DNA of 64,000 bases from positions 38,316,001-38,380,000 of the forward strand of contig NW_026889758.1 of the NCBI RefSeq assembly GCF_033153115.1, given 5' to 3'. The notes under the pieces were generated by a model. The model was given only the letters and a program-made list of their open reading frames with translations. It was not told the DNA's origin and did no database searches. Position 1 is the first letter of the stretch. Each line of letters begins with the position of its first letter. Source of the DNA: Saccostrea echinata (Eukaryota). Both the position numbers and the translations under genes were made by a program. Of this stretch, positions 1 through 58,700 are shown piece by piece.

Positions 1-18704
<18,704 letters not shown>

Positions 18705-21069
18705 TTTATTCCTTATTTATATGAAATTAGACGGAACTGTTTAGAAAACATTTGCTGCACCTTGCTCACTTGGTATGAAAACAGCCAAATTCGAAACGGG
18801 AAATACTAAAGTCAACGTAATGTTAGAGCCAAACCCAGCAGTATATTTCCCGGATAAAGATGACAGGCATATTTCGGGAGAATCCGTGAACTTAGTTCAC
18901 TTTTTATTGTATAATGTCAAGAGTTTAAAAGATCATTCATCTAATGAATATTAAAGGCCCGTAATACCCCCTTTATTTATTTTTACTTTGTTCTAAATTT
19001 AGTAGAGACTTTTTTACTCCATATTTTCTCAGTTGCACGGGCCGGCGGTCTGCAAATCCCGACGCCTATGAATACATGTGACGTAGAAATAAATACATTT
19101 ATAGAATACGAAATTTGGTACTATTTATACGGATTTTAATCAGAAATTGTTTCCTTAGTCGTCGATTTCCACAATACAACCTGGCATCGAGTCATCGACT
19201 ACTTGATACCAAAAATTTCTTAACAATGATGGAACCAAAGACTTCGTTTTCGGAGTTCACGCCGTTTTTGGAGTTCATCTAGACTGCAATTTACTATATA
19301 TCAGTTGAAAATGTCACTCAACCATGCTTAACAAACTTGTCGCAAGCAGGGATGTAGCATCGTTTTTGAAATTGCGTGTAGGAAGGGGGGGGGGGCAGAA
19401 AAAAAATCAACTTACCTAAAAAAAAAATTGACAAGTAGAAAAAAGGAAAATTGTTCAAACTCGAAAATCCTATTTCGTTGGGGAAGGGGTAGGTTCAAAC
19501 TTCTTTCTTTTTATATATACACTACTACATTACCCTTATTTGACTACACTACAACAAAAAGTGGTAGGGGGGACCGGCCTTTCAATGAACATTTTCAAAA
19601 GTAAAAAGTTGTATTTGGAAAAAAGGGGGCAGCCTCCCCCCCCCCCCCCCGATGCTAAGTGCCTGACAAGAAACTCTTTACTAACCGAAGAATGGCTAAA
19701 TTGTTTATAGCTAGATAAACAATGACGATCCTATCGTCAAAAACCCATTCCATTGATTCCGCTTCGTGCCTCTCATTGATGGAGAGAAAAACGAAGCGTA
19801 ATAAACCGTGGGTTTCTGACGATGTGGCGATGATCGGTAAGAATTTTAAATTTCGCCTCCTTTTCTAATAAAGGTAATTTAAGAGAATTTCTAGGACAAG
19901 TAAAGTGAAAACATAACAGTGAAATGTATTGGGGGGGGCGTGAATTTACCCAAAAAAATTGCAGTTTTTTTTTGTTTTTTTTTTTTTTTTGAGAAGGCCT
20001 TCGGTCTGTAGCCATATTTTTCCCCGGAGAGGCTGTACATAGATGTAGCTGTGAAAGGTCTATCATGCAAAAACAGTTTTGTATATTAATATCATATAAT
20101 ACTAGTAATTAGATGCAAAGTTTCACACAGTTTTATGAAAATCAACGATACATTTTTTAAAACATATTTTCATCATATTTACACTTTAAAGTCTTTCTGA
20201 CTTAGAAATCTTTTTATACATACAACATAAGATATTTGCAAATCTAACTAATCCCTACAAGGCAGGAATTGAGACCAGAGGCGTCTTAGTAATTAGCACA
20301 TATAAAGTGTATTGTGGTTGTGGTGGTGGTGGTGTGTGTAAGGGGGGGGGGGGGGGTCACATCCAAGATATATACTCAAATTGCAACTCATTGAAAAGCA
20401 AATCAGTTTGACAAACCACAAAGAAAACGTGATTAATGAGAAATTTAGCAATTTGATAATTGATATCAAAATAAGTTGGGGGCTGCCTCACCCCGACTAC
20501 TCCTATAGGGGCCAATTATAAGGTTCAGTTTTACTCTTAAAATTCCTAGAATTCATGAGCTTATAGGAACTTTACACCCTGAACCTCCACTTGGACCCAC
20601 TAGGGGGCCCTTTGCCTCTGAAAATATATTCCACCCTCTAAACGGAAATTCCAAGATCCGCCCCTGGCGGACTTGGAAATTTTGAAAACTTTGGATTTCA
20701 ATAGAAGAGAGGGTATATCATGCGTCTGGGTTGGGTTCATCTAATGATTTATTGCTGACAGTGGTTCATTGTTAGTGGTGTGACCGAGGCCTGCAACTGA
20801 ACCTTGTATTCGTGAGTTTTCATATTTTCTGTTAAATATTTCCTGTCTTATTTCTAGGAAAAAATAAAGTAAACTGATTTGGCAGTTGAGAAAAGAAATG
20901 GATATTGAACAGCAGTCTTATGTCTCTAGCCAATGTCTATGGTGGATTTAAATATCACAAATTTAAATATCTATCCCTAGATTGATATTGCTAAGTCCTT
21001 GTTTTTGTTGTTACTATGTGTTGTCACAATGTCCATATTTTTTCAGCCTAAGATCGCCCGAGACAGAAA

Positions 21070-22278
21070 ATGACAAGTAAGTATATTTCTCATTACATGG
21101 TAACAACCCGGCCTGAAAATCGTTAAATGACACACATTGTATAGCAAAAAAGGCCTAACAATATTTAAACTAGGCCTTCTTCTTGTTCTTAACAGAAACG
21201 AGTAATTTAATATCCTGCATGGACTATTATATAGAAAAAATATCAAAACATGTATCAAATATTAATTATGTAAAGTACACGGACTGAGTCTGAACCAGAA
21301 AATTGTTCTCAGAACTTGGGAGGCTGATTGACTGTAGTTAGTATAAATGTACTTTAGTTAGTACAGAGTATTTGTACTACTTCATAAATCTTTTATTCTG
21401 TTTAGGTGCCTGGTTGGTATTGCGAGATATTTGGAAAGACTTCATAATATGCGATGGAAAGAAAGTTGAGATAGTAGGAGGATTTCGGGGGTTTAGAAAT
21501 ATCCCTCCTGGGAATCACACGATAGAGAACTATGGAGCAAAGCTTGAGGTAGATTTGAAGCCGGGGGAGGTGAAAGTGTTTGTTTTAGATAGTCACAATA
21601 AGGTGAGTTGTGCTAGCTTCGTGATGTGATTCGCAGACTGCCAATCAGTCTGGTATAATCCGAGTACAAGTTCATATCAAGCTTATAGATTAAATGTCTG
21701 GGTGTAATTAAGTGTCTTTTAGAGTAATTAAAGGGTCATACATATATATGCCTAACAATCTATATTTTATTTCTTTTTATATATAAGTATACAAAAGACA
21801 TTTTAACAGTCTTTCTTTTGCTACGTTCTGGGGGAAGAGACAAACTTGTATTTTTACATTGCCTTTACTAAATGATTACTGTGTTAACATAAAACATACC
21901 CCCCCCCCCCCCAGTTCTTCAAATGGAAAGTTTCTGAGTGCAAAAACATCATCTCTGGGTTATATAGATTATTCTTCATGTATTTCTTTCTGTGAAGTAA
22001 ACCCAAATCAAAGAAAGGGGGGGGATGAAAATCAGAAAATTGAATGTTCGTAGTTTTTAAGCAAATTTTCTACATTGCATTTTTTTTAAAGATATCTCAT
22101 CGGGGATTTCTTGGACAAAGTTTCCAACTAGATTTTCAAAATGATGACTCCTAAAAAAATGTTTACTATGATTGAGCAGGTATTCAAAAGATTCTCGGAA
22201 GAAGAAGATGATTTTGGATTCCACCATTTAGCAAAGAGCGGTGCGATGGGCAAAGCGTTATATGAGTGGCCGACTTGA
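21070..22278 (+). CDS. 100-aa protein resembling a stand-alone AAR2 N-terminal beta domain
   Basis: Exons 21070-21076, 21406-21602, 22180-22278 (303 nt, phases consistent): MTSAWLVLRDIWKDFIICDGKKVEIVGGFRGFRNIPPGNHTIENYGAKLEVDLKPGEVKVFVLDSHNKVFKRFSEEEDDFGFHHLAKSGAMGKALYEWPT*. FRGFRNIPPGNH resembles AAR2 FRGVKMIPPGIH. Probable 5'UTR donor at 20810 and acceptor at 21046. Confidence 0.75.
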
Positions 22279-23014
22279 CGCACAAACTGAACCAACGGTG
22301 ACCATTCTTAGATAGATTATGTGCATATCATATCATGTCTAAGCATGATAAACTTATAGTCTATAAGATGAAAAAAATGTTCATAAGTGCACTTTAAACT
22401 AAGCGGACCGATTCCAACAACGAACAAACAGTTTATGTTGTGAATGTAATGAATGCATTTGAAATAAATGATTTTACACGTGGTCTGAATAGTTTTGCTT
22501 TCACTACTAGGTACAAAGAATTCAGCAGTACTGTTAAATGAACAAACCATTTTACGTGTGTTTATTGTATAAGTTATAAATAATCTTAAGATTGAAATAC
22601 AAGTCTCTGAATGGACCAGGGCGGGACACGTCATGTTCACATGAAATATTTGAATCAATTTTAATGTCTAGAGATTTGTATCGTGTTCACATCAAAATTC
22701 GTGAAAGTTGTATAATGCTTTAGGATGGATGTGTAGCTTCATTTTATGTGGCCATTTTTTTTGACGTCGGATTTTTTTTTATATATATACAATCGCGTCT
22801 CGGCGACTGCCGACGAAGATGATATCGAACGTTTCCATAAACACTGTTGAACAGCATGTGGTTTATAAGCTTAGGTAGATGTATACATAAACTTTATGCA
22901 TCGTCGCAAACCACGGCCAAAATGTACGACCCTCTCCCATTCTGGAGAGAGCTATATGCGGACTCCGGACCGTGGCTTGAGACGATGAACTTTATGCGGA
23001 TCTTCGAAAATACG

Positions 23015-24035
23015 ATCAGAGGCCCATGGACCACAACGCTCACCTGGGCCTCCTGTTCTTCAGAGGAAAACATTAAAAGTATGTTTTTTTCCTCTTTTTA
23101 TGCATTTCTTTAAGGTGTTTCTGTTTGCATTAAGTAATATTCTGAGCTACCCTTCGTTCTATTCTAGCTATCTTCGTTCATTGGCCGTCTTCCTGGCTGC
23201 TGCCCAGTGATTCGTTGAAAACAAACATGTAACTAGGTATTACGCGAGAGATTTGACAAACCACATTCAAATTGAAGTAGGCTGAGCTAGTAATTCTTCT
23301 ATTTATAGCCCATTATCAAGGTTTTCAACTCTCCATATAGACAAGACACGCTCCTACCAAAAAGAAGTACGTTTAGCCCTTGATGTTAACCTTCAATTTC
23401 AGCAGGGACCTATATGCTAATAGTACAGGTTCTGATGTCAGGGACTGGATATGAAGCTTTTTTTCTAATAAATTAGTATACAAATGAAATTAAAAAACTG
23501 TTTAAAATTATATGTATTTCGTGTTTCTGTGCCTCTTTGATTGAACTCCGTCCATCAACCAATCACTGAATCAGCTTTGAAAAAGGTTCGCCTATAAGCG
23601 AGGGCATTGTTTAACACCGACTGGAATAAAGAGTGAAAAGAATTATGAAAGGTATTGAAATGAGTCCTAGTATTTCATATTGAAAAATATTGACTCCATG
23701 TTGTGGTTAGGGCCAAGGAGTTATGATCTAAAACTTGAATCCACTCGAAATTGAGATGCTTTAATATAAATATGACTTACATGGCCACATCGCAAATTAA
23801 CCTCAGGGTCCACAATTTGAGTTTAAAAATGAATCAACAGAACTTAGGAATGTTTGTATATTGATATGATAGACCGTTGAATGAGGATGTGAATCTTCAT
23901 TTAAACAAAATGAATCCCTTTACCTAAGGATGTTTTGTGGCAAGTCTGATTGAAATTGGTTTAGTGGGTTTTGAGAAGAAGCCAAATAAACGGACGGAAT
24001 GCTCATTTGAGTTTTAAGCCCAGGTGAGGTAAAAG
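23015..24035 (-). mobile_element. Non-autonomous Helentron/pearl-type element
   Basis: Reverse-strand terminal boxes agaggcccatggaccacaacgctcacctg (23017) and gctcatttgagttttaagcccaggtgaggtaaaa (~24001-24034), with degenerate satellite monomers between them. Confidence 0.7.
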
Positions 24036-24350
24036 TTAGATTTTATCATTTATGGAATCGTATGTTACTGTTTATAAAATTCGTGTTTCAATTTTTTGGC
24101 ATTGGTTTATTTAGCAATTAAAAAAAACATAACAACTAACAAACATTTCGAAACAATATCGCAAGGATAAAAAAAAAATAGATAACCTGTCATCATATGT
24201 CACCGAAGTCCGATGTTCTCAATAGTTAAGATTATGAGTAAATTGAAAGTTTAAATATAAACAATAAACTATTTGATCTGCGTAGATGATCAGTTTTGTA
24301 ACATAAAATGTTTCATTTGCTCCATCCCCAATCTTGTCAACAACTGTAAC

Positions 24351-24566
24351 TTAAAGTAGATGATTAAATTCCGATCTTTGATAGCGTTTGTTACTCATGA
24401 AACGTGCCCTTGTTTGTAGGGCTATTTTGATTCTGTCACACTGGGGAATCTCCATTCGTGGCGGATCTTCATTCTGGCGATCATCTTCCTCATGTTTTAT
24501 AGATTCCGCCTGGTTACCGGAAGTATCCTCCACATCGTCCTTGGTATCCTCCGCTGACATTTGAAC
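24351..24566 (-). CDS. Possible terminal exon of a small unknown gene (acidic N-part, basic C-part)
   Basis: Acceptor ctgtaacag| in frame with VQMSAEDTKDDVED...RYQRSEFNHLL*. An exon-like segment at 25682-25586 exists, but no clean full model could be built. Confidence 0.3.
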   Translation of the reverse strand, partial: VQMSAEDTKDDVEDTSGNQAESIKHEEDDRQNEDPPRMEIPQCDRIKIALQTRARFMSNKRYQRSEFNHLL

Positions 24567-25894
24567 CTGTTACAGTAAATGAAATCTTTCGTATGAACAT
24601 TCGGCACAACGATTAAATATGATATATTTATATGATCATGCATTCGTCCTTGTCCTTGCCATCTTCACAATGTCAAGGTTTTATGATTACGGATGTCCTT
24701 TCGTCTTGTTCGATTGTCTTACATTTGTGAAAAATAAATAAATAACAGATTATGCTGTTGTTCTGTCTACTACTACAAATGCATAAAGTGCGAGGAGTCT
24801 CTACTACAATTTGTGTTAATAATAATGTTTCGCTCAAGTAGAAAACGATAGCAAATAACATTTTACGTCAATGTTGATATTCCAGGGCTATTATTCATTT
24901 CATAGACTTCACTCAGGAGAATTCGACCAAAAATATCAATCGATTCAACTGAATAATTTGCTTAACATCATGAAAATGGGTCGGTTACTGACTGAATGCA
25001 GATCTTGCAGAATTCTACAAAGACGCCGTGTACTCGAGACAATAACATCTGAAAGGTAAACTACAGAAGCAAAAATGTTGAAAAATGATATTTTTAGGGA
25101 ATCCATCAAATAATTCGTTTCTTATGAAATTGTATGTAAGATCTTTGCATTTAAACATGTACATGGCTGAAAATTATTGTTTAAATGCACTGTTTTCTTC
25201 GTCAATTACCATTGCCACAACAACATTGGTTAACACATGATCAACGCAGGAATGTCAAATTCTGATATTCTTTTCATCTACGTTTTTACTAGCAGTTCAA
25301 CAAATCATTAGTATATGCGGCATATGCAATTGCAATAGCCTGCCATATATACTTTTGGATCAATGGATATCATAACAGTATAACACAGATTAGATTCTTC
25401 TTGAGGTGCATGACTTCAAGATAAAAATCTTTAGTTTTAAATGTGAATGAAATCAATAGATGATATTTAGAAGATTTCGTCAATAAATGGTACAAACGGA
25501 CACCATGTTCGAAGTGAAAGACTGGAATGAGTGGAGATGATGGTATTTTGGTTTTATATATACAAAAGAAAATAAAAAAGCTTACGTGCTAGTGGTCCAA
25601 TTCCTCGACTTCTCCAATGTTTGTCATATGAACTCTTGACGATTCTCTCGCCGAGTCGACTCGCTTTAAAGGCTAATTGGGACTGTAGAAATCAGCGTTA
25701 AAGGTACATTGTTTATAGATCTTTTTTTTCACAGGAGGTATATAGCAATCGTTCACGCGTCAACTTATAAGAGGATTTACAAGGTCGATACACTGCGAGG
25801 ATTTAATGAATGTGGACATTTTGTTCCTGTCAGGGACGTGCGTTTAATTATAAGTGCTGGTTATACGAATATTCTGTTTGTCTATTGGCTTAAA

Positions 25895-26702
25895 ACACGA
25901 GACCTATGGGCCACAATAGTCACGTGAGATATCCTACTCTTATAAAGTTTTGGCATGGTCACCCTATTCACCGGGTATATCCCAACATATGGGATGTATA
26001 CTATGTTGTGCACAGGGTGTATGCTTTTGAAGCGATAAAACGGGAGTCGAGGTACGTTTTTTGTCTAATTTCTCAATTTATTTCGCCGGAAAGCATCTGC
26101 TCACGGAAGAAAGCATTTTTAGGAACATATGGATACATGTACCTATGAATCCATCGTACACTTTCTAGTTTCATCAAACACCTCAACACAATTCTGACGA
26201 TTAGAACAAGATTGGCGGTACATTGTGTTTATGTATAACATTCATTTTTCGTCAATATTTTTTAATACGAACTATTTTATTTCCAGACAATTAATTTATT
26301 CATACATTTATATGAGTAACATGTTTAATATAAAAGTGATGATATATCAAAGCTTTGTTCTGATATTTGATCATAATCACAATGTAGCGTCAATCTTGCT
26401 CTGATCTTCAGAATTGTGTTGAGGTGAAACTAGACAAAAAACGTACCTCGACTCCCGTTTTATCGCTTCGAAAGCATACACCCCGTGCACAACATAGTAC
26501 ACGTGACTATTGTGGCCCATAGGTATCCACATGTTCATAAAATAATGCTTTCTTCCCTAAGCATATGCTTTCCAGCAAAATATATCCATATATTGAGAAA
26601 TGTGACTAAAAACGTACCTGAACCCCCGTTTTATCGATTTGAAAGCATACACCCCGTGCATGTAACATAGTATACACCCTGCACGTTGGGATATACACGG
26701 TG
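25895..26702. repeat. Rearranged foldback/inverted-repeat structure, probably TE-derived
   Basis: 25996-26066 vs 26431-26500, 25902-25926 vs 26500-26524, 26165-26233 vs 26372-26433, and 25969-26060 vs 26610-26702 are reverse complements. Confidence 0.8.
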
Positions 26703-44800: not shown

Positions 44801-47800
44801 TATATATATTTCAACAAATTTGTCATACAGATAAAGCAAATTACATATAGCCAAAAAAAAAAAAAGCCCTGAACTTTTCTATAAATGAGTTTTACTGTAT
44901 ATGATGAACAAACCTTTTTACCTGTAACTGTTCTTATTTGAAGCAGTACTAGTAATCCCTTAATTTTGTTTTTTGTGTTGTAGGTTACAGCCCTAACACA
45001 CTTAGGCTTCTCATTCAGTACTTTACAAGTCGAGGTTTTGCTGTATTGGATGTTAACTACAGAGGAAGTAATGGATTTGGTACACAATACAGAAACAAAC
45101 TCAAAACAAAGTAATTATTGTATATCAAAGAAGCAATGAATATCTAAAATTTAGTATATGTCCATGTACAGGTATTCTTATTAGCTCACTTGAGTCAAAG
45201 GCTCAAGTGAGCCTTTCTGATCAAAAGTATGTCTATCATTTATTGGTATCTGTCTGTCATCTGATCTTTTTCCACAAATTTTGATGTCTCTTTTCAAGAA
45301 AATCTGGACCATTATCAGACTTGGCTCAAATTATCCTTGGATGAAGGGGATTCAAAATTATTATTTCTTTTTTTTTGAAATGAAAATTTTCCAATAGGAA
45401 ATAATAAAGAAATAATGAAAATAGACTGTCACAGGTCATTTTAAACATTCTCAAGAACTGCTGAACCTGAAATAAAAAAAGCTTATGTGAAAGGCTTCTA
45501 TCACAAAAACAATATAACTGAACATTCTTTAAATGGCTGTAACAAATGGATGTGTTTTAAAGGTTGTAAAAATATTTGAACCACTAATTGGATGCTTTTT
45601 TTTTTTAAAAAAAATATGACTGACTGGCATTCAATGACAGTCAATGGCATGACTGGCTTCTCACCCATAGTTATATCCCATGCACAATTTACATCTCTAA
45701 AATCTTTCATCTATAATATCTTTTTACTAGATGGGGAATATATGATGTTGATGACTGCTGCACAGGGGCTCAGTCTTTAGCTGATGAAGGTCAAGTGGAC
45801 AAGAATTGTCTGTGTATTGATGGGGGATCAGCAGGGGGATATACCACACTGGCTTGTCTGGCCTTCAAGAATGTGTTTAAAGCAGGTAAAATAAGGTTGA
45901 CAGAAAATATTTCAGTTCATTCCAACCATTGGGAAATATTAACAGTATGTGTCAGCTAGCACTCTGGAGAACATTTTTATTGCACAAGTTTTTCACTTTT
46001 TATGTGATTTTTCAAATCACCCGTTAGTTGTCTCCCTTTTGTGTATGTATACATGGAAGTATTAAACAAAAGAACATTGATTAGTATTGAAGGACACATG
46101 TCATTAAAAAGATTCTTCACTCTGAATGTATTAGACAAACATCTGATAACAATGCACAGATGGATTAATAATGAACTTTAACACCAGTGGCAGCAACTCT
46201 CCAGAATACAGAAGCTAGTGTATAAGAATCAGACAAGAGCATTCATGTAGTAATCCTGTGTAAAAAAGTGTAAAACAAGATGTGCTTGATAAACACAAAT
46301 GCCCCAAAAGTGTCCATTTATAATGAAAGACAATGATTCGGAGGGATGCACGGTTTAAACAAATAAGTAACTGTAAGGCCAAAATAAAAAACCTTTGTTT
46401 CCCCTAATGCGACCGACCCAATAAAATCTAGCCGACTGAAAAGTTTTTATTCAATTTTTTTTATGTTTATCAACTTTCATAAAATAAAATTTCATCAAAA
46501 TCTGCATTTATCAGAATGGCTGAAATTGTTCTACAGTGATTTTCAAGCGTATTGTGCCCATAACATGTGGTCACAGAGGATTATTTCGTTTACAGTGTTA
46601 TAAAACAACTTATCAACATTATGCCTTTAGCTTATTAGAATCCTACACTCTTTAAACATTTCGTTAATAAAATATACCATGACTAATTAAGAGTGTTTCG
46701 GTGGTATTTGCAATCCTGTCTTTTAAAATTGAGGTACTTAGTACATGGTAAGGCCAGCCTCATGAACAGTCCAGGCCGGGCATACTTTGTGGACATATCA
46801 ATCAATTTCACTGCATTTTATTTGAGTTTTGATGTGGTTTGAGTGTTTGAAGACTACAGTGTATATGTGGTTATACAGATCAATCACATAATATAAATGG
46901 TAAATAATTGATGTTCTACTGATTTAAATCAGGATTTATCTCACTACTGTTATGATCTTTGGTGTTGTTCAGTGTGTGTTAAAATGTCATGAGTAATTCA
47001 CAACTATATCTTAACCATCCCTGTCTTAAATTACAGGACCTTGATAGTTACAATGTACTAGTGTTGTACCAATAATCAGAGAACATCGATTGTCGATGAA
47101 AAAATGCTACCAATTCCGATGATCAATTATTATTTTTCATAATCGATCATCAGTAACGAACTTTTTATAAAATACAATCTGGAATTATCCGTTCCCAGTT
47201 TAAAATTAAATGAAAGAAAAATGGCATCTTATGTGTTATAAAGCCAACTAGCACAAAGCATAGGTGATTAAGAACCAAAAGGTACAAATATAGAAAGTGT
47301 AAAAGAAGCAAAACAACAAAGAAAACAATATATTTTATATATTCATGTTAAAGAAATAAAATGAAATACTTGTAATAGTCTGCTTTTTATATACAAAACT
47401 ATTACATCCGATTATAATCAGAAAAATCACATCGGAAGCAGTAACCAATTCCAACCGATGATCAGTTAAAAAAATTACCCGATGTCCCATCACTAGTAGT
47501 CACAAGTAATTGCACAGTTTTCAGTGCAATTTTCAGTTCATATACCGGTAGCAATGCAAAATAAATTTAATCAGTGAGTTAATATATAGCTGTATTATTG
47601 AGAAGGCACTAAGAAATTGATGGACTAAGAAATTCTCATAGATGTACACAAAAGCAGTAGGCCTATCCACTTTTAGGCCATCACTAAAAAATATCTTTGT
47701 TTCCCCTAACCCGACCCTAAAATCTCAAGTTGGGTAGGTAGGTAGGTAAATAATTTTTTTTTCTGACAGAAGCTTTGAAAATACCTTCTGAAATTTAATG

Positions 47801-50559
47801 GAATAATACCTTTATATTAAAATAAGATCAGTACAAAAGAAAGCGATTTGTAAACAGAACATCATACAAATGCTGTTTAAAAGCAAAATTTAAGGTAAAT
47901 TAATTCACAACTATTATCAAATTGAACTTGTGAAATATCTGATGCCAGTGTAAATTTATTGAAATCGAATAATTAAAAAACAAGATTTTCAGATACTAGT
48001 ACGCAAAGACCGACATCCGAGTATATTTTTCAAACCTCTAAATTTAATGTCTAAAATGTCATTGAAAATACTGAATCCAATCCATTTGCATTAAAAATAT
48101 TTAGTTATATTCAGTGTAATTTCCTTAATGAAATCCAGTGGAAATCTGCAATATTAAATACCCTACTGTGCGGTGGAATACACAGTAGGAACTATATGCA
48201 TTTTCAATACTTTAGGAACCAAAATGTATATTGTTTTGGCTCAATTAACATGTCTGATCTTTTCTTCAGAAAAATAAGTGATTTAAATTTTTTTTGGAAA
48301 AATATTAGTGCTCTCATATATATTATATATTGTATATATATAAGACTGTAAGTTCTATGGTTCAAAAGTTTCTAGGAAAGCTAAAGTTTTTGACAGAAAT
48401 GACAGATTTGCAGACAGTACAAAAACAATACGCCTCCAGATCTGTGATCTTGAGGCATAAAAAAACTTTTAGAGCAAATGCATGTACATTGTACAAGTAC
48501 CAGCTACATCAATCCTAACTCCTTTCGAAACTCTTTGCATCTTGGTTGTCAAATGCACTGGGGTTTCATTTTGGCACATTTTAAAATAATGTTTTGAGTT
48601 TTTTCACCTCCATTGTAGAATTTCAATCTTTTTCATAGGTACCAGTCTATATGGTGTAGCAGATCTTGAGGCACTGGTCAGAGATACCCACAAATTTGAG
48701 AGTCGGTACATTGATAACCTTGTTGCTCCTTACAGTGAAGAAACCAAAAAGATTTATGATGAACGCTCTCCTATCCATTATGTTGATAAACTCAACTGTG
48801 CAATGGCATTCTTTCAGGGAGATGAAGACAAGGTTAGTTATTTAATATATACATGTAAATTGAATCTAAAAAATGCACAAATTTTATCAGCAATGATTAG
48901 GTCAAAAAATGACATCTTTATTCAGTATTTGAATATTGATAATTTTCATTATATTGGGAAGTTATATGATGGAGTATATTAATCTACTGTGAATACGTAA
49001 ATTCTCAGATTGTTCCACCAAATCAAGCAGAAATGATGTATGAAGCTGTAAAAGCCAAAGGCTTGCCAACAGTATTGGTCATGTTCAAAGGTAAGGCAAT
49101 AAAAAAGAGCAGAAAATAGCATTTCTTTTTTTTTTTATTTGATTTTTAACTCACCTGAGCTTTCACCAGAGCTGAAAGCTCAATTGAGCTTTTTAAATCA
49201 CATTTTGTCTGTCTCTTCATCTGTAAATTTTTCACATTTTTAACTTCTTTTCAACCAATTTCAAGCAGACTTGCCACAAAACATTCTTGGGTAAGGGGGA
49301 TTTAAAATTGCTCAAATGGAGGCCCATGTCCTCTTTCAAGGGGAGATAATTAAGAATTAGGGAAAATTTAATGGCATCTTTGTAAATATCTTTTGTCAAA
49401 AACCACTGTGCCACATGAGATGAAACTTATAAATAAGCTTCATTACATAGTGTAGATTCAAATTTGTACAAATCATGACCCTCCAGAGGTAAAGGGTAAG
49501 GCAACAATGGGCGATCAAAGTTTTACATAGGAACATGTAGCAAAAATCTGGAAAAATTTTCTTCTCAAGAACATGAAAGCAATTATTAGTCATATTTATA
49601 TAGAATCATTCTCAGGTAGTGTAGATTTAGGGTGGGGACACAATTGGTGATCAATGTATTACATTAAAATATTCAGAAATTTTTTTTAAAAAAATCTTCC
49701 TCTCAGGAACAGAAAAGCCATTATTTTAACTATGTTAAAATATTGTCATACCTAGATAGATATTAACTTTCTAATAGAAAATTGACATTTTCAGAGTATG
49801 GGTGCAAAAGGGAAATAACATCTTCTTTTCTGCTTGAAAAATAGAAAATCAAGTTCTTCCACTGATCAATACATGAATAAAATTCATCAATGCAGCAGTG
49901 TTTGACCTTAGATGCAGCTGTGCCTTAGAACCTGTAGATTTTTTTTTATCGACCTCATGCTTTTATTTTATCATGATTATTGTAAGACATTCATAATTTT
50001 TTTTTTTCTGAGGAGTTAAATTAGCTAGGATATAACATGAACTTAGATTAGGTGCAAAATGTGTATTCACTAATTCTATCATAATTGTGGTATTCTCTAC
50101 AGTTTTCCTATATTAACTCTTGCACACCAAACAATAAACATATTATCCTTTAATATATTTCAGGAGAGCAACATGGTTTCAGAAAAGCTGAGAATATACA
50201 GACAGCCCTGGATGGGGAATTCTATTTCTTTGCTAAAGTATTTGGCTTTGAGCCAGCTGATAAACACATGTCTGTAAGTCTCTGTTTGATCACTGAAATG
50301 TGCATAATAACATTTTTCATCTTATGACCCTAATAAGGTCATTTTTAGTGAAGCAGGTATAAATTATGCTCAGTCAAGAGGATGTCGGTAGTGTGGAATA
50401 ACACACACTGTCAATCTTACCTCAAATGTTTAACAATTACCTTTCAAAATTATAATCCTTATAGATACAGTAATTTATATTGATCATTGAAAACAGGAGT
50501 TTGTTTAATCATGACTTTTTTTTTCTTTTCAGCTTGACATTAAAAATCTGAAAGGATGA
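31742..50559 (+). CDS. Prolyl oligopeptidase family S9 (S9C, puromycin-hydrolase/acylaminoacyl-peptidase-like) serine peptidase, 658 aa
   Basis: 14 phase-consistent exons: 31742-31856 ([15 protein letters not shown]), 37252-37541 ([10 protein letters not shown]), 38734-38850, 39880-39966 ([24 protein letters not shown]), 41106-41183 (PWD), 42775-43011, 43316-43480, 44027-44219 ([11 protein letters not shown]), 44984-45110 ([10 protein letters not shown]), 45731-45885 (GGSAGG, catalytic Ser), 48639-48832 (FQGDEDK, Asp), 49009-49090, 50164-50273 (GEQHGFRK, His), 50533-50559. Total 1977 nt. Confidence 0.95.
32065..32675. mobile_element. Non-autonomous Mutator-like (MULE) element with 9-bp TSD
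   Basis: tctctatcc at 32056-32064 and 32676-32684; GGT...ACC ends; subterminal gttcgcc/ggcgaac inverted motifs. Confidence 0.8.
33070..34272 (+). repeat. Cg170/HindIII-like ~166-bp satellite array (~6 monomers) ending in a Helentron/pearl terminal box
   Basis: ctcaagaacca recurs at 33235, 33401, 33564, 33735, 33897 and 34062; 3' box caggtgagcgttgtggcccatgggcctcttgttttt. Confidence 0.9.
34312..36127. mobile_element. TTAA-flanked TIR element (Kolobok/piggyBac-like) with a nested element in its right TIR
   Basis: ttaa|ggctgcggaacattaaatggcaagattggaaat...atttccaatcttgccagttaatg[insert]taatgttctgcagcc|ttaa. Confidence 0.75.
35202..36112. mobile_element. Nested non-autonomous DNA transposon (CAGG...CCTG ends, taatg duplicated)
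   Basis: caggcctctaa...ttagagccctg flanked by taatg on both sides; subterminal aaattttaggc(g/a)cca repeats. Confidence 0.7.
36423..36805. mobile_element. MITE (PIF/Harbinger-like)
   Basis: TIR ggtcattccaagttttttctatgtttag / ctaaacagagaaaaaacttggaatggcc. Confidence 0.6.
37003..37178. mobile_element. Tc1/mariner-type MITE with TA TSD
   Basis: ta|cagtaaaacttggt...accaagttttactg|ta. Confidence 0.7.
38363..38492 (+). mobile_element. Solo LTR of a tRNA-containing TRIM (Helenus-type)
   Basis: TGT...ACA ends, 4-bp TSD tatg; internal tRNA-like segment with A box tagctcagttgg and B box ggttctaatc. Confidence 0.75.
39978..40990 (+). mobile_element. Helentron/pearl-type element with degenerate ~160-bp satellite monomers; related copies ~45178-45500, ~49143-49720 and their duplicates at +11575
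   Basis: 5' box ttttagttcacctgagctgaaagctcaagtga followed by monomers containing ttcaaatcatgacc...ggggccacaatg. Confidence 0.8.
41757..41820. repeat. (TA)n microsatellite, ~32 units
   Basis: Read directly from the sequence. Confidence 0.97.
43560..44010 (+). mobile_element. Second non-autonomous Helentron-like family fragment with internal tandem repeats
   Basis: Repeated ttcatatttcaca..gtatttcttgtgacaaga and a 3' end ggggcat...tttcacaaacacatcttgt; the reverse-oriented end of the same family lies at ~46275. Confidence 0.55.
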
Positions 50560-51243
50560 GATGACATACATTTATTTAAAAAAAAGACTATTTAGTCAGA
50601 ATGCAATTAAATGGACACCTGTTTGATACATTAAAGCAAATTTTATATCCAGATTTTACATATTTTGACTTTTGCATTGATGATAAATGAGTAAAGTGCA
50701 CTGATTGCTTAATGCATGATAAATTTTAAAAGATGATCCCCATGATGTGCCCTTACAGCTTCTCTTAAAAAAAAATGGATTGGTTCACAGTCTGTAAGCA
50801 CCTCACTGTACATAAATAAGTTTTGTTATATAGATCCCTTTTTAACTCCAGTCCAATTTACTTACATAGCATGTTTCAATTTCAATGTAATAATCAATAC
50901 AATCTTTGATCTGATTCCAGCTTTGACTTGTGCATACAAATTCATAAAAGCAATTTTTTGAAAATTCATCCTATCATACTCAGTGAAATTGAATGGAATG
51001 ATTTATCTGTACATAAAAAAATGGCTCCAACACTCTGAATGCCTTCAAGCAATAAATTAAAAATGAAACAATGTCTAAATAATTTGTGATTATCAATTGT
51101 TTGTCTACATGTATGTATATTTATGTTTATGGTCAGGAGGCCCTGGGAAAGAATATTTCTTGTACTAATCATGTTACATTTTTTTAAATAAAGTTTTACT
51201 ATTATTATTATTGATTTTGTTATATTATTATTTTTAAGAATAT

Positions 51244-53608: not shown

Positions 53609-55700
53609 ATGACTATTGTTCGAGAATCCAATATGGCGTCGAGGAAGCTCGGAGAGCAAAAACGAGAATTGAGAACTGTGTTGGTAAAAAGATTGCTGAC
53701 GAAGAAGAGGAAATACTCCAGAAACACGTATATTTGTGCGCTTATTCAAAGTACTGTGAAAAAAATTCTAGAAGTGAAGAGACCGAAATCTCTTGAAAAC
53801 CCAACAGATGGTGATCGTAATTTCGTTTCACTGGGACTCGATCATGGTTGTAATGTTGAATTAAGGAGTGATCCTTTAGATATAGATAAGTTTTTAAACA
53901 AATTGTAGGTCAGGTAATTTTTGAATAAAAAAAACGGGTTCATTCATTTATAAGAAAGTGTACTGTTTTTAGTGATCCTATTATACTACCTAAAGGGATC
54001 ATCCATTGTATTGTGTTCAAACATAAGTATATGTACTGCTTTTAATGACCAAAATAAAAACATTGCTTTTTTGTTGCCTAATTGCTTATTTTGTACTTTA
54101 TTGCAGTGCAGGGTCCATGAAGGCTCTGAATTGTAGAATTGTATGGCTGTTCATTGCAACATCATAACGTAAGACTCCTTGTTAGTGTGGACCAAACCCA
54201 CCTCCTCTGAGATTCCCCCATCTTGATGCCGCTTTGCTGCCCTGTCATTATCTGCCATGGCTGCCCCTAGATATGTTATAGCAAAGAAAGTAGGAATAGG
54301 CCTTGGATGGAAAAGTCCAAGCTGTTAACTGGTGAAAGAGTTGAAAGTATGGTCAACATTGATCTACTAATTCCATCAAGCAATGATTATTGATGACCTA
54401 GTGGTAATCTTAAATGGCCTAGATCATCCATCGTCACAATATTGAGAAGGATATGCCCTTTTCCCCTGCTCTTTAAACATGACTGAAGTATTACAAGACC
54501 AGTTGTCTATGACTTGGGAAGTGTAAAATGCTGTGGTTTGTAGACAAAGATCGTTCAAGTATCAAAGTTAAACCTTTTCTTTGTTTAGCAAGCAATTTAT
54601 GTTAAATTTAGTAAGAAAACTTTAAAGTGACTTAAATTGGGTATCATCAATTATTTACAAATGTTAATAGATAAATTGCATTTTTACATCCAGAGGATGC
54701 CGAGACAATATTTAAAACTGAATGTGACTTTTCAAGACTTAACATGTCATTATGTCAAGTTCTGTTTTGAATGTTTGGATTGGTTGATGGGTGAGGCAAT
54801 GCAATTCAATTGAAAATTATAAAATAATTGTGAAAATTTGACATTTCACAGCAGCACATGGGTTCTTAACAAGGAGCCAGTAAATGAAATTCAATGGATC
54901 TGAGGGTGTAATTCCAGAGTAATTGATGAAAGGGAGGAAACATCTGCTCTGATCCTTATCCTCATACATTGAAGATGAGGAGGAATCATCATTGCTTCTG
55001 GTTGATAATTTAAGAGGAATCGTCTCCCATCTTGCATTAGAAAATTCTGGCTTCCAGAAAATTTGTGTACCTTGACAGTGAACCAATAGATAAAGGTCTT
55101 ATTATTAAGGTTTTGTGGTGTGAAGGTAGAACATTTATGTAGTAAGGTAAAATGATGAAAATGTTTAAATTTTACAACAGGAACCATTCAAACCACAATT
55201 TTCGTATTGTGCTTGTTTAATTGGTAAAAAATATATTGCATTACATTGGTTATTTCAGCTTTGAACGTCCCATGGGGTCTTTCTGCAGAATATCACCCCA
55301 ATACTCCTCTCTAAAGCACCTCTCCAGAATTTCTCATGGAAAATCAACTAGAATCCTTTCAAAGAAACTTTCAGTCCCTGTTAAAAAAAGACATGAAAGA
55401 GACAACCTTTCCCTTTGTACTAGAGCAGAGGGCCTTGCAGTCTTGATTCCCCTTTGTAAAATCCTGAAATGCCAAGGGAAGGTAATTTGTTGTGTCATCA
55501 TATTGATAACAAAATGAAACTTTTTTGTTAATTGAAGGGAAGGGAGGGAGTAGTTTCACTTTACAGGTGAATGAAATTACAAAACCCCAGAAGAGCGCAA
55601 AGTATGGTCAATCTTGATCTACAGTGCCCATCTTACAGTGCAGACTTAATGGTTATCAGAGGTACCCAGATTAAATGGCTCAGTTCTTCCACCGTTACAG
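53609..55700 (+). pseudogene. Degenerate multi-exon coding relic of unknown identity, possibly from a transposon; truncated by the duplication junction
   Basis: Exon-like blocks with splice signals (53609-53908, ~54107-54530, ~54852-55110, 55260-55481, 55567-55700) containing stops and frameshifts; internal paralogy KVWSTLIY...LNGLDHPSSQY vs KVWSILIY...[11 protein letters not shown]. Confidence 0.4.
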
Positions 55701-58700
55701 TATGGATTCTTGTATACCCCAAAGAACAAGGATTACAAGGCTCCTGATGGAACCCTTCCACCACTCCTTGTCAAGGCACATGGAGGACCAACAAGTATGT
55801 CAAATTTCATTGACTTTATTTAGAACAGGTTTCCTATTGTAGGAGAGATAGGGGGTGGGGCTTAGGACAAGAGGAAAAATTCAAGTCACAGCCCTGTATC
55901 TCTCAAACAATAGGAAATATGTATTCTAATTGACTTGTAACAAGACTTTTCTGATGACCTCACTAGTCTACATATGTGTATGGGTATTACTTGTACTTTT
56001 CAACCAATCAAATGATTCTGCAGCAAGTTGACAAATTGTTATCAGTTATGGTTAAAATTCTGAGTGTGGTGCACATGCACTGTAACAGATGGACAATATT
56101 ACCATTTATAATATTGGTATGTGTTATATAACATGTTTTCCTCTCTGAACTGATTTTGTGTCCTGTAGAGGTTTAAAAATAATTTTATTTACATATTTAT
56201 AAAGAAGTCTTAAAATCTTTAAAATATTAAACTGACATTATTTTCCCAAGTGTTTTGAAATTCAGTTCATCTGAAAACTTTAGTACCCCATTGTAAGTTT
56301 TGTTATGATTTAATACTTCCCTGAACATATTTTGATAGTTATACTTGAAGGAAAACATGTATATTGCAAATTTGCTATATATATTTCAACAAATTTGTCA
56401 TACAGATAAAGCAAATTACATATAGCCAAAAAAAAAAAAAGCCCTGAACTTTTCTATAAATGAGTTTTACTGTATATGATGAACAAACCTTTTTACCTGT
56501 AACTGTTCTTATTTGAAGCAGTACTAGTAATCCCTTAATTTTGTTTTTTGTGTTGTAGGTTACAGCCCTAACACACTTAGGCTTCTCATTCAGTACTTTA
56601 CAAGTCGAGGTTTTGCTGTATTGGATGTTAACTACAGAGGAAGTAATGGATTTGGTACACAATACAGAAACAAACTCAAAACAAAGTAATTATTGTATAT
56701 CAAAGAAGCAATGAATATCTAAAATTTAGTATATGTCCATGTACAGGTATTCTTATTAGCTCACTTGAGTCAAAGGCTCAAGTGAGCCTTTCTGATCAAA
56801 AGTATGTCTATCATTTATTGGTATCTGTCTGTCATCTGATCTTTTTCCACAAATTTTGATGTCTCTTTTCAAGAAAATCTGGACCATTATCAGACTTGGC
56901 TCAAATTATCCTTGGATGAAGGGGATTCAAAATTATTATTTCTTTTTTTTTGAAATGAAAATTTTCCAATAGGAAATAATAAAGAAATAATGAAAATAGA
57001 CTGTCACAGGTCATTTTAAACATTCTCAAGAACTGCTGAACCTGAAATAAAAAAAGCTTATGTGAAAGGCTTCTATCACAAAAACAATATAACTGAACAT
57101 TCTTTAAATGGCTGTAACAAATGGATGTGTTTTAAAGGTTGTAAAAATATTTGAACCACTAATTGGATGCTTTTTTTTTTTAAAAAAAATATGACTGACT
57201 GGCATTCAATGACAGTCAATGGCATGACTGGCTTCTCACCCATAGTTATATCCCATGCACAATTTACATCTCTAAAATCTTTCATCTATAATATCTTTTT
57301 ACTAGATGGGGAATATATGATGTTGATGACTGCTGCACAGGGGCTCAGTCTTTAGCTGATGAAGGTCAAGTGGACAAGAATTGTCTGTGTATTGATGGGG
57401 GATCAGCAGGGGGATATACCACACTGGCTTGTCTGGCCTTCAAGAATGTGTTTAAAGCAGGTAAAATAAGGTTGACAGAAAATATTTCAGTTCATTCCAA
57501 CCATTGGGAAATATTAACAGTATGTGTCAGCTAGCACTCTGGAGAACATTTTTATTGCACAAGTTTTTCACTTTTTATGTGATTTTTCAAATCACCCGTT
57601 AGTTGTCTCCCTTTTGTGTATGTATACATGGAAGTATTAAACAAAAGAACATTGATTAGTATTGAAGGACACATGTCATTAAAAAGATTCTTCACTCTGA
57701 ATGTATTAGACAAACATCTGATAACAATGCACAGATGGATTAATAATGAACTTTAACACCAGTGGCAGCAACTCTCCAGAATACAGAAGCTAGTGTATAA
57801 GAATCAGACAAGAGCATTCATGTAGTAATCCTGTGTAAAAAAGTGTAAAACAAGATGTGCTTGATAAACACAAATGCCCCAAAAGTGTCCATTTATAATG
57901 AAAGACAATGATTCGGAGGGATGCACGGTTTAAACAAATAAGTAACTGTAAGGCCAAAATAAAAAACCTTTGTTTCCCCTAATGCGACCGACCCAATAAA
58001 ATCTAGCCGACTGAAAAGTTTTTATTCAATTTTTTTTATGTTTATCAACTTTCATAAAATAAAATTTCATCAAAATCTGCATTTATCAGAATGGCTGAAA
58101 TTGTTCTACAGTGATTTTCAAGCGTATTGTGCCCATAACATGTGGTCACAGAGGATTATTTCGTTTACAGTGTTATAAAACAACTTATCAACATTATGCC
58201 TTTAGCTTATTAGAATCCTACACTCTTTAAACATTTCGTTAATAAAATATACCATGACTAATTAAGAGTGTTTCGGTGGTATTTGCAATCCTGTCTTTTA
58301 AAATTGAGGTACTTAGTACATGGTAAGGCCAGCCTCATGAACAGTCCAGGCCGGGCATACTTTGTGGACATATCAATCAATTTCACTGCATTTTATTTGA
58401 GTTTTGATGTGGTTTGAGTGTTTGAAGACTACAGTGTATATGTGGTTATACAGATCAATCACATAATATAAATGGTAAATAATTGATGTTCTACTGATTT
58501 AAATCAGGATTTATCTCACTACTGTTATGATCTTTGGTGTTGTTCAGTGTGTGTTAAAATGTCATGAGTAATTCACAACTATATCTTAACCATCCCTGTC
58601 TTAAATTACAGGACCTTGATAGTTACAATGTACTAGTGTTGTACCAATAATCAGAGAACATCGATTGTCGATGAAAAAATGCTACCAATTCCGATGATCA

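What the first reader, a model, noticed from the sequence alone, without database searches (positions are those of the whole stretch)
21070..22278. Stand-alone AAR2-N-terminal-domain-like microprotein head-to-head with NVL
Seen: a clean 3-exon, 100-aa gene only partly captured by the ORF track. Established: AAR2 is a U5 snRNP assembly factor that binds PRPF8, with an N-terminal beta domain carrying FRGVKMIPPGxH and ending near LDxxLGPYP, followed by a helical C-terminal domain. Here GFRGFRNIPPGNH, L.PGEV.V and MGKALYEWP follow the same order, and the protein stops where the N-domain would end. Inference: a single-domain AAR2-like protein, either a truncated paralogue (possible competitor of AAR2) or a member of a separate, perhaps horizontally acquired, family.
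Basis: partly seen in the sequence, partly recalled or inferred. Interest (0 to 1): 0.75.

Follow-up and report, generated by a model that had tools for sequence, protein, structure and literature searches.

The report
Stand-alone AAR2-like domain gene in oyster
Oysters carry a small, spliced and conserved gene for a 100-residue protein that has the fold of the front half of the splicing-assembly factor AAR2 but lacks the half known to hold AAR2's partner, so what it does is still open.

Summary
A 3-exon gene (ATG 21070, stop 22276-22278; exon 2 ends at 21602) encodes 100 residues. Both introns are absent from a 525-nt contig of a public run that matches the window without a mismatch, and no joint leaves exon 3. 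NCBI already lists 100-aa orthologues as 'uncharacterized protein' in Saccostrea cucullata, Crassostrea gigas, C. angulata and C. virginica.

The AAR2 reading also holds, but not through Pfam. PF20981 scores 14.8-17.2 bits against a cut-off of 23.6. The support is:
- An oyster-only profile matches the N-domains of bacterial proteins that carry both AAR2 Pfam domains (hhalign 99.8%, E 1.7e-30).
- A pLDDT 93 model of the Saccostrea orthologue matches the human AAR2 N-domain (Z 10.9, 98 residues, next unrelated Z 6.0).

It is not a recent copy of the oyster's own AAR2, which lies on another contig. It belongs to a separate clade whose other members are two-domain 'mini-AAR2' proteins, one of them amoebozoan. 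The oyster protein has lost the C-domain.

Published structures say the AAR2 N-domain does not touch PRPF8 RNase H, so competition for that known interface is unlikely. Function and origin (horizontal transfer or retention) stay open.

The parts
21047..21076 (+). Exon holding the start codon (ATG 21070-21072; 5' UTR at least from 21047). An in-frame TAA lies at 21049-21051.
   Evidence: In one search the X1 contig begins at 21047 and joins 21076 to 21406. 21047 lies just after an AG (21045-21046), so a further non-coding upstream exon is possible but was not seen.
21077..21405 (+). Intron 1 (329 nt, GT..AG), splitting codon 3
   Evidence: the joint skips 329 nt in 1 contig of X1.
21406..21602 (+). 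Exon 2. It encodes residues 3-68, which form strands 1-7 of the beta-sandwich, including LRD, GGFRGF and IPPGNH.
   Evidence: (89% identical to Saccostrea P0001).
21603..22179 (+). Intron 2 (577 nt, GT..AG)
   Evidence: the joint is seen in 4 of 4 runs. The read-through products of other oyster contigs break at the same residue (P0003-P0011).
22180..22278 (+). Exon 3 coding part. It encodes residues 69-100 (last sandwich strand, helix LAKSGAM, final strand ALYEWP) and the TGA stop.
22279..22477 (+). 3' UTR with AATAAA at 22463-22468. The contigs end at 22391-22477.
14948..15271 (-). Context only: the ORF stretch that contains the NVL exon encoding the first AAA Walker A region. NVL is the divergently oriented neighbour gene.
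   Evidence: One search gives the ORF. One search gives human NVL (9bji_A, E 2.8e-31) as best PDB hit, ahead of p97/VCP at 1.6e-24.

Best explanation
This is a real, expressed, single-copy oyster gene for a 100-residue cytosolic protein. The protein consists only of a beta-sandwich that is homologous to the N-terminal domain of AAR2.

It is not a copy of the oyster's own spliceosomal AAR2. It is the remnant of a separate, non-canonical AAR2-like lineage ('mini-AAR2'). The other members of that lineage are about 230-270 residues long and carry the same N-domain plus a shortened AAR2-type helical C-domain. The oyster lineage lost the C-domain and kept the N-domain under purifying selection.

Inferred mechanism: the protein works as an autonomous small protein-binding module. 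The binding would use the surface built by the motifs that are conserved across the whole family (LRD, GGFRGF, VPxGxH, LAxSGAMxxAL). It cannot work through AAR2's known way of holding PRPF8, because that needs the C-domain and the C-terminal tail, and both are absent here.

Shown: the gene model, the splicing, conservation in oysters, the homology, the fold and the absence of a C-domain. Inferred: that it binds a partner. Unknown: what the partner is.

The confidence of 0.8 is for identity and descent (AAR2 N-domain homologue, separate lineage, C-domain lost). For the binding-module mechanism alone I would give about 0.4.
For: Gene and splicing.

Single locus.

Orthologues: 100-aa proteins in 4 named oyster species, plus further unnamed oyster-like contigs. 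The window's protein keeps all 14 of the 14 positions that are invariant or at least 90% conserved in the 40-sequence family alignment.

Homology:
- A profile of two oyster proteins, searched against 1.84 billion representatives, gave 63 hits at E<=1e-3. Most cover positions 4-99.
- One of them, P0018 (E 9.5e-10), is Pfam-positive for AAR2_1st (8.3e-19) and AAR2 C (2e-11).
- 32 of 40 alignment members hit PF20981 and 13 of 40 hit PF05282 at E<=0.01.
- hhalign of an oyster-only N-domain profile against 21 bacterial AAR2-like N-domains gives 99.8%, E 1.7e-30, 99 columns.
- The family profile hits human AAR2 7pjh_A at E 4.6e-15 over both domains.
- The three nearest ESM Atlas clusters shown are all AAR2_1st (score 0.89, 200 of 256 features).

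Fold:
- The AF2 model of orthologue P0001 has pLDDT 93.3 and pTM 0.85.
- In Foldseek against the PDB, ranks 1-7 are all AAR2/Aar2 (7pjh_A E 2.4e-6, TMq 0.73).
- In VIA-wide, 7pjh_A scores Z 10.9, rmsd 2.5 over 98 residues, and 4ilg_A scores Z 7.5. The next unrelated chain scores Z 6.0.

Separate lineage:
- In the tree of 57 N-domains, the oyster clade (96/92) sits inside a 10-row clade (99/90) with P0012-P0017, including Protostelium nocturnum. The cyanobacterial and Leptospiraceae AAR2-like proteins fall in another clade.
- The C-domains of the two-domain relatives (four of them, P0014-P0017, from the oyster's 10-row clade) match the AAR2-type C-domains (hhalign 96.4%, E 1.4e-9).
- The P0017 model's top 10 Foldseek hits are all AAR2.

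No C-domain:
- tblastn of 13 relatives' C-parts against the 64-kb window found nothing below E 0.7.
- P0012 searched against the whole genome hits only exon 2.

Canonical AAR2 lies elsewhere, at G000:C30:4092605-4095078.

PRPF8 contacts lie in the AAR2 C-domain and tail, not in the N-domain (PMC9629490, passages). NCDN binding needs AAR2 residues 202-384 (PMC13338715, passages).
Against: - Pfam's own threshold is not reached: 16.1 bits for exon 2 and 14.8 / 17.2 bits for P0001 / P0002, against 23.6. P0001 has no family at E<=0.01.
- A profile of the narrow clade alone (A6, 6 sequences) finds no AAR2 chain in the PDB at E<=10. phmmer of P0001 finds only pyocyanin demethylase, at E 0.12. The link to AAR2 therefore rests on intermediates and on a predicted structure, not a solved one.
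- Within the oyster's own 10-row clade, only 1 of the 6 non-oyster members (P0012) hits PF20981.
- The model is of the Saccostrea orthologue. It differs from the window's protein at 7 of 65 residues in exon 2 and 2 of 32 in exon 3.
- No partner, localisation or phenotype is known. The binding-module mechanism is an inference from fold and conservation only. 'Cytosolic' is inferred too: the N-terminus is strand 1 of the fold in the model, and no signal-peptide predictor was run.
- Purifying selection is inferred from protein conservation; no dN/dS was computed.
- The runs are labelled RNA only by guess.
Confidence: 0.8

Rival explanations
1. Decoy of canonical AAR2. The microprotein would occupy whatever the AAR2 N-domain binds (for example a part of PRPF8 outside the RNase H domain) and so tune U5 snRNP assembly.
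For: It has the same fold as the AAR2 N-domain. The FRG..IPPG.H motif is shared with the oyster's own AAR2 exon 1 (7 of 14 residues). In yeast, Aar2 also contacts the Prp8 RT/En domain across the linker-endonuclease junction (PMC3677097, passage; the passage does not say which Aar2 domain makes the contact).
Against: [quoted passage not shown] Identity to the AAR2 N-domains is only 15-17%. The nearest relatives are not canonical AAR2. The same domain occurs in bacteria, which have no spliceosome.
Confidence: 0.12
2. Foreign origin. An oyster ancestor acquired the gene horizontally from a microbial eukaryote or a bacterium. The gene then gained introns and lost the C-domain. This concerns origin only and can hold together with the best explanation.
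For: Among the hits I could name, oysters are the only animals. The other named members are Amoebozoa, a euglenid, cyanobacteria, Leptospiraceae and an unnamed bacterium. The family is patchy: PF20981 was found in 1 of 201 sampled genomes of the Nostoc phylum, and that one was the genome the search was centred on.
Against: It has two GT..AG introns, sits in a single locus between oyster genes, and has orthologues in at least 4 named oyster species, so any transfer would be old. Most hits are unnamed, including the nearest one, P0012, so absence from other animals is not shown. The tree is unrooted and has 104 columns. Vertical descent with many losses explains the same pattern.
Confidence: 0.25
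3. Transcribed relic. The ORF is a decaying fragment of a former two-domain gene and makes no functional protein.
For: The C-domain is gone. No function, paper or expression study was found for the four locus names and two protein accession numbers searched.
Against: The frame is intact and 100 aa long in Saccostrea, three Crassostrea species and this genome, at 73-89% identity. All 14 family-wide conserved positions are kept. The fold is predicted with confidence. Stand-alone or terminally fused copies that end at the same WP motif recur in other lineages (P0023, P0036, P0040, P0050, P0052).
Confidence: 0.07

Closest known systems
AAR2 / Aar2p, the U5 snRNP assembly factor (human 7PJH; yeast 3SBT, 4ILG, 4I43); Pfam PF20981 (N-domain) plus PF05282 (C-domain)
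   Same: The fold of the N-terminal beta-sandwich is the same (Z 10.9, 98 of 100 residues aligned). The FRG..[IV]PPG.H motif and the closing ..L..[WY]P strand are shared.
   Different: It has no helical C-domain and no C-terminal tail, and those are the parts that bind PRPF8 RNase H and Jab1/MPN (PMC9629490). Identity to the AAR2 N-domain is 15-17%. PF20981 stays below its cut-off. The genome has its own canonical AAR2 on another contig.
Two-domain 'mini-AAR2' proteins of microbial eukaryotes (for example P0017 of Protostelium nocturnum, 233 aa; unnamed P0014-P0016). No published name was found.
   Same: They are among the nearest relatives of the oyster N-domain (clade support 99/90). They share the LRDxxKD, GG.RG..NVP.G and DDFG[FY]H.LA.SGAM motifs.
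   Different: They keep a shortened AAR2-type helical C-domain (hhalign 96.4%). The oyster protein stops right after the N-domain.
Bacterial proteins that NCBI names 'AAR2 pre-mRNA splicing protein' (Coleofasciculus, Trichocoleus), and like proteins without that name (Nostoc sp. UHCC 0252, Leptospiraceae MAGs); about 260-282 aa
   Same: The N-domain is homologous at hhalign 99.8%, E 1.7e-30, 35% identity.
   Different: They have both AAR2 Pfam domains above the cut-off. They form a separate clade and occur in organisms without spliceosomes.
Single N-domain copies fused to other modules (TPR in P0040, ankyrin plus pentapeptide repeats in P0028, PUB in P0032, N-terminal hydrophobic segments that look like membrane anchors in P0023/P0030/P0036/P0039/P0052)
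   Same: The domain is used without an AAR2 C-domain. In the copies where it lies at the C-terminus it often ends at the same ..L..WP motif.
   Different: In those proteins the domain is tethered to another module or to a hydrophobic segment. The oyster protein is the bare domain.

Membership tests
AAR2 N-terminal domain (Pfam PF20981, AAR2_1st) | Score at or above Pfam's gathering cut-off (23.6 bits) | tested here: not met
   Exon 2 peptide: 16.1 bits, E 0.013. P0001: 14.8 bits. P0002: 17.2 bits. PF20981 is the only Pfam family listed for any of them.
AAR2 N-terminal domain (Pfam PF20981, AAR2_1st) | Significant homology to members that pass the cut-off | tested here: met
   The oyster profile reaches P0018 at E 9.5e-10, and P0018 scores 68.5 bits on PF20981. 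hhalign of the oyster-only profile against 21 such N-domains gives 99.8%, E 1.7e-30. The family profile reaches human AAR2 at E 4.6e-15. Against this, the narrow-clade profile A6 finds no AAR2 chain in the PDB.
AAR2 N-terminal domain (Pfam PF20981, AAR2_1st) | Beta-sandwich fold of the AAR2 N-domain | tested here: met
   This rests on a predicted model (pLDDT 93.3). Foldseek ranks 1-7 are AAR2/Aar2. VIA gives Z 10.9 for human and 7.5 for yeast, against 6.0 for the best unrelated chain.
Canonical AAR2 (U5 snRNP assembly factor) | Helical C-terminal domain (PF05282) | tested here: not met
   The protein ends at residue 100. No C-domain exon is in the window, and none was found in the genome when searching with P0012. 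PF05282 hits only G000:C30.
Canonical AAR2 (U5 snRNP assembly factor) | C-terminal tail that extends across PRPF8 RNase H and, in yeast, bridges to Jab1/MPN | tested here: not met
   The tail is absent because the stop follows the N-domain. Its role is described in PMC9629490 and PMC3677097 (passages).
Canonical AAR2 (U5 snRNP assembly factor) | Binds PRPF8 and takes part in U5 snRNP assembly | not testable with these tools
   This needs pull-down or complex data.
Canonical AAR2 (U5 snRNP assembly factor) | Is the genome's AAR2 orthologue | tested here: not met
   A full AAR2 with both Pfam domains (E 9.4e-18 and 5.9e-52) lies at G000:C30:4092605-4095078. Only a 14-residue motif aligns between the two.
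Mini-AAR2 clade (P0012-P0017 type) | N-domain groups with this clade | tested here: met
   IQ-TREE, 57 rows, 104 columns: the 10-row clade has support 99/90.
Mini-AAR2 clade (P0012-P0017 type) | Shortened AAR2-type C-domain present | tested here: not met
   The C-domain of the relatives is shown.

The most novel reading that the evidence does not exclude
The AAR2 N-domain may be an old, autonomous binding module of a wider AAR2-like superfamily that is not tied to the spliceosome. The superfamily reaches into bacteria and several protist groups. On this reading the oyster lineage captured one member, possibly by horizontal transfer, stripped it to the bare module, and now uses it as a microprotein regulator. 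Finding its partner would also reveal what the so far partner-less N-domain of AAR2 itself binds.
Probability: 0.2. Interest if true: 0.65.

Novelty: new variant of a known kind. Interest (0 to 1): 0.45.

Why it matters
- It gives a first structural and evolutionary annotation to a gene that four oyster RefSeq sets list only as 'uncharacterized'.
- It shows that AAR2-type proteins are not one orthologous line. There is a second, shorter lineage in protists, there are bacterial homologues, and the N-domain is reused on its own or fused to TPR, ankyrin, PUB and TerB modules.
- In the AAR2 papers I read, no partner is assigned to the N-domain: the PRPF8 RNase H interface and NCDN binding both map to the C-terminal half. 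A natural stand-alone N-domain is therefore a handy probe for what this domain binds.
- The practical weight is modest. There is no phenotype, no partner, and the animal range so far is oysters only.

Tried and rejected
- **Recent truncated duplicate of the oyster AAR2: rejected.** Only a 14-residue motif aligns. No canonical AAR2 was recognised among the 63 hits, judged by length and by those of them that I scanned with Pfam. Canonical AAR2 lies on contig C30.
- **Onward splicing into a longer gene: not seen.** This rests. No C-domain exon is in the window.
- **Paralogues in the genome: none.** One weak extra hit on C56 at E 4.3 is chance level.
- **Pyocyanin demethylase 5k21 as a relative (E 0.12): dropped.** It was not recovered by the fold searches.
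- **My guess that P0012's C-part resembles the C-part of cyanobacterial P0033: not supported by BLASTP, withdrawn.**
- **Naming the nearest relative P0012: failed.** It is a singleton.
- **Last word-based search with A3: only 2 proteins returned.**
- **Narrow-clade profile against the PDB: no AAR2 hit.**
- **Idea that bacterial AAR2-like genes are partners of a large upstream gene.** I looked at one Nostoc locus only. The 1316-aa upstream ORF has no Pfam or NCBIfam hit. I did not pursue it.
- **Bacterial-type promoter and terminator scan of 20000-21200: of no use for a eukaryotic gene, not used.**
- **Literature.** There is no paper with 'AAR2-like', 'AAR2 N-terminal', 'AAR2_1st' or 'PF20981'. 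There is none with the four LOC names or two XP numbers. The listing for AAR2 + cyanobacteria + homolog showed nothing relevant among the 8 of 23 papers listed, judged by title and the start of the abstract only. Supplements were not opened and could hold expression tables that name these loci.
- **Papers read as passages only:** PMC9629490, PMC13338715, PMC3677097.
- **Papers not held:** PMC3672837 and PMC3182018. What I say of Galej 2013 and Weber 2011 comes through the papers that cite them.
Full report
**1. The observation**

Reading the window gives a + strand gene with these parts:
- ATG at 21070
- a 7-nt coding start (ATGACAA) followed by GTAAGT
- an acceptor TTTAG before 21406
- exon 2 up to 21602 (AAG, then GTGAGT)
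- an acceptor GAGCAG before 22180
- TGA at 22276-22278

The in-frame pieces translate to 65 residues and to 32 residues plus the stop. The coding parts add to 7+197+99 = 303 nt, so the product has 100 residues. I first mis-set the end of exon 2 by one base (21603). The splice joints fix it at 21602.

An in-frame TAA at 21049-21051 lies upstream of the ATG. The first + strand AATAAA after the stop is at 22463-22468.

Contigs of four public runs were laid on 20200-26100:
- Run X1 has one 525-nt contig with no mismatch. It covers 21047-21076, exon 2, and 22180-22477, with both introns (329 and 577 nt, GT..AG) missing.
- The second joint appears in 4 of 4 runs (two studies) and the first in 1 of 4.
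- No joint leaves exon 3.

The runs are Logan contigs whose RNA label is a guess. The genome holds the exon 2 and exon 3 peptides at this locus only, so an intron-less DNA copy is not the source in this assembly.

**2. The gene in other oysters**

The exon 2 peptide finds 9 proteins. The best is the 100-aa NCBI 'uncharacterized protein LOC134230569' of Saccostrea cucullata (P0001), 89% identical over exon 2 and with the same exon 3 product apart from 2 of 32 residues.

P0002 (100 aa) shares a 90% cluster with proteins of three species, all named 'uncharacterized':
- Crassostrea gigas, XP_011451655.1
- C. angulata, XP_052702326.1
- C. virginica, XP_022334448.1

The other hits are ORF calls on short genomic contigs that read through into intron 2 at the same residue. 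This shows the same intron position.

So the gene is real and already annotated, but unnamed. The window's genome is therefore an oyster. I infer this from these identities only.

**3. What the protein is**

Weak or negative direct evidence:
- Pfam lists only PF20981 (AAR2 N-terminal domain), and below its cut-off: 16.1, 14.8 and 17.2 bits against 23.6.
- phmmer against PDB sequences gives nothing useful.

A lead:
- The three nearest ESM Atlas clusters shown are all AAR2_1st (score 0.89, 200 of 256 features).

The decisive sequence result is the HMMER search of a two-oyster profile against 1.84 billion representatives. It gave 63 hits at E<=1e-3. In most of them the whole domain (positions about 4-99) matches the N-terminus of a 200-290-residue protein, or the C-terminus of a longer one.

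Pfam on relatives, in two overlapping scans:
- I scanned 30 relatives. Twenty list PF20981 and 8 are above the cut-off. Examples are P0018 (68.5 bits, plus AAR2 C-domain at 2e-11) and P0045 and P0055, which have both domains.
- Of the 40 members of alignment A2, 32 hit PF20981 and 13 hit PF05282 at E<=0.01.

Further sequence links:
- A profile of A2 hits human AAR2 (7pjh_A) at E 4.6e-15 across both domains. GGFRGFxxVPxGxH aligns with FRGVKMIPPGIH, and the closing ..aL.dYP aligns with LDQFLGPYPY.
- To avoid leaning on the mixed alignment, I compared an oyster-only N-domain profile (4 sequences) with 21 N-domains of the bacterial AAR2-like clade. The result was hhalign 99.8%, E 1.7e-30, 99 columns, 35% identity.
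- Against the reading, a narrow-clade profile (A6) does not reach AAR2 in the PDB by sequence.

**4. Fold**

AlphaFold2 on P0001 with A2, without templates, gives pLDDT 93.3 and pTM 0.85. The model has eight strands, a helix at 82-88 and a last strand at 95-97.

Foldseek against the PDB:
- Rank 1 is human AAR2 (E 2.4e-6, TMq 0.73).
- Ranks 2-7 are yeast Aar2p entries.
- Only one hit reaches E<=1e-3.

The Foldseek-independent VIA search of 48,161 chains:
- 7pjh_A scores Z 10.9, rmsd 2.5 A, with 98 residues aligned (model 1-100 to chain 16-127).
- 4ilg_A scores Z 7.5.
- The best unrelated chain scores Z 6.0.

The paper on 7PJH defines the N-domain as residues 10-158 (PMC9629490, passage). The oyster protein therefore covers the sandwich up to the GPYP-equivalent strand and stops about 30 residues before the annotated end of the domain.

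**5. Which lineage**

The genome has a canonical AAR2 at G000:C30:4092605-4095078, with both Pfam domains (9.4e-18 and 5.9e-52). Its first exon and the small gene's exon 2 share only FRGFRNIPPGNHTI / FKGVKMIPPGIHFV, 7 of 14 residues.

The maximum-likelihood tree has 57 N-domains and 104 columns. It is unrooted, and I left out partial domains and repeat false positives such as P0037 and P0066. It shows:
- the four oyster rows as a clade (96/92)
- that clade inside a 10-row clade (99/90) with P0012-P0017
- the cyanobacterial and Leptospiraceae proteins in a separate 22-row clade (91/92)

Names come:
- P0017: Protostelium nocturnum
- P0067: Mastigamoeba balamuthi
- P0046: Ploeotia vitrea
- P0033 cluster: Microcoleus
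- P0035: Leptolyngbyaceae
- P0068 cluster: Coleofasciculus and Trichocoleus, named 'AAR2 pre-mRNA splicing protein' by NCBI
- P0049 cluster: Leptospiraceae MAGs
- P0040: an unnamed bacterium

I compared the C-parts of 11 two-domain relatives with the AAR2-type C-parts of 15 proteins of the bacterial AAR2-like group. The 11 were P0014-P0017 from the oyster's own clade, plus P0024, P0044, P0048, P0063, P0065, P0067 and P0069. The result was hhalign 96.4%, E 1.4e-9, 103 columns.

The two-domain model of P0017 (pLDDT 92.1, pTM 0.55) has AAR2/Aar2 as its ten best Foldseek hits. The rmsd is high because the domain orientation differs.

The oyster protein's relatives are therefore short two-domain AAR2-like proteins, and the oyster version has lost the C-domain:
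- No such exon is in the window; all tblastn hits are at E>0.7.
- P0012 searched against the whole genome hits only exon 2.

**6. Mechanism**

Shown: the protein is a compact, confidently folded, conserved N-domain. The window's protein keeps all 14 positions that are invariant or at least 90% conserved in A2: L8, R9, D10, K13, G27, G28, R30, G31, P36, G38, A86, G89, M91 and L95.

From the literature (passages only):
- In both the human and the yeast complexes, the AAR2 N-domain makes no direct contact with PRPF8 RNase H. The C-domain and the tail form the interfaces (PMC9629490).
- Neurochondrin binding needs AAR2 residues 202-384 (PMC13338715).
- Yeast Aar2 also contacts the Prp8 RT/En domain, but the passage does not say through which domain (PMC3677097).

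It follows that the microprotein cannot copy AAR2's known hold on PRPF8. A decoy role would have to go through an unknown N-domain partner.

The same domain recurs without an AAR2 C-domain in other proteins:
- after TPR repeats (P0040)
- after ankyrin plus pentapeptide repeats (P0028)
- before a PUB domain (P0032)
- after N-terminal hydrophobic segments (P0023, P0030, P0036, P0039, P0052)

This recurrence, and the domain's presence in bacteria, favour an autonomous binding module whose ligand is not specific to the spliceosome. That last step is inference.

**7. Origin**

The named animal range is oysters only. Relatives are scattered in protists and bacteria. In the phylum of the Nostoc hit, PF20981 was found in 1 of 201 sampled genomes, and that one was the genome the search was centred on.

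This patchiness fits either old horizontal transfer or many losses. The two confirmed introns and the shared presence in Crassostrea and Saccostrea make any transfer old. I cannot decide between the two.

**8. Comparison and verdict**

The protein works like, and is homologous to, the AAR2 N-domain. It is not AAR2: it has no C-domain, no tail and is not the orthologue. It is also not a full member of the mini-AAR2 group, because it has no C-domain.

I found no paper on such proteins. Supplements were closed.

I rate it a new variant of a known kind, of moderate interest. It agrees only in calling the neighbour NVL, which I checked myself.

Noticed in passing
window 21045-21047: The spliced X1 contig starts exactly after an AG (21045-21046), at 21047. 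This may mean that a further non-coding 5' exon splices in here. No contig lay on 20200-20987 in the four runs.
   Followed up: partly
window 22898-22987: A short stretch is covered by many contigs of all four runs. They carry 2-9 mismatches and have loose ends on both sides, so this looks like a dispersed repeat.
   Followed up: no
window 24091-24564 and 25584-25787, minus strand: A spliced minus-strand transcript lies downstream (joint 24564/25584, CT..AC, run X2). It overlaps an acidic 69-aa ORF at 24351-24560(-). It was not identified.
   Followed up: no
window about 44000-50800 and 55600-62400: Chance tblastn hits come in identical pairs offset by exactly 11,575 bases (for example 47177/58752, 45005/56580, 50778/62353). 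This points to a tandem duplication of several kb.
   Followed up: no
L009 4001-4804 (Nostoc sp. UHCC 0252 record): A 267-aa bacterial protein carries both AAR2 Pfam domains (3.1e-18 and 1.2e-13). It lies 22 nt downstream of a 1316-aa ORF that has no Pfam or NCBIfam match. PF20981 was found in 1 of 201 sampled genomes of that phylum. Why bacteria hold AAR2 homologues is unexplained.
   Followed up: partly
proteins P0032, P0055, P0019 (one search hits): The domain occurs in unusual architectures. P0032 has it with a PUB domain (7.3e-18), and I recall that PUB domains bind p97-type ATPases. P0055 has TerB plus a full AAR2-like unit. P0019 has four tandem copies in a 1207-aa protein. The oyster gene sits next to the p97 relative NVL, which may be coincidence.
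   Followed up: no
window 18534-18704, minus strand: The ORF beginning [21 protein letters not shown] may be the first coding exon of NVL. It lies about 2.4 kb from the small gene's ATG. This was not verified.
   Followed up: no
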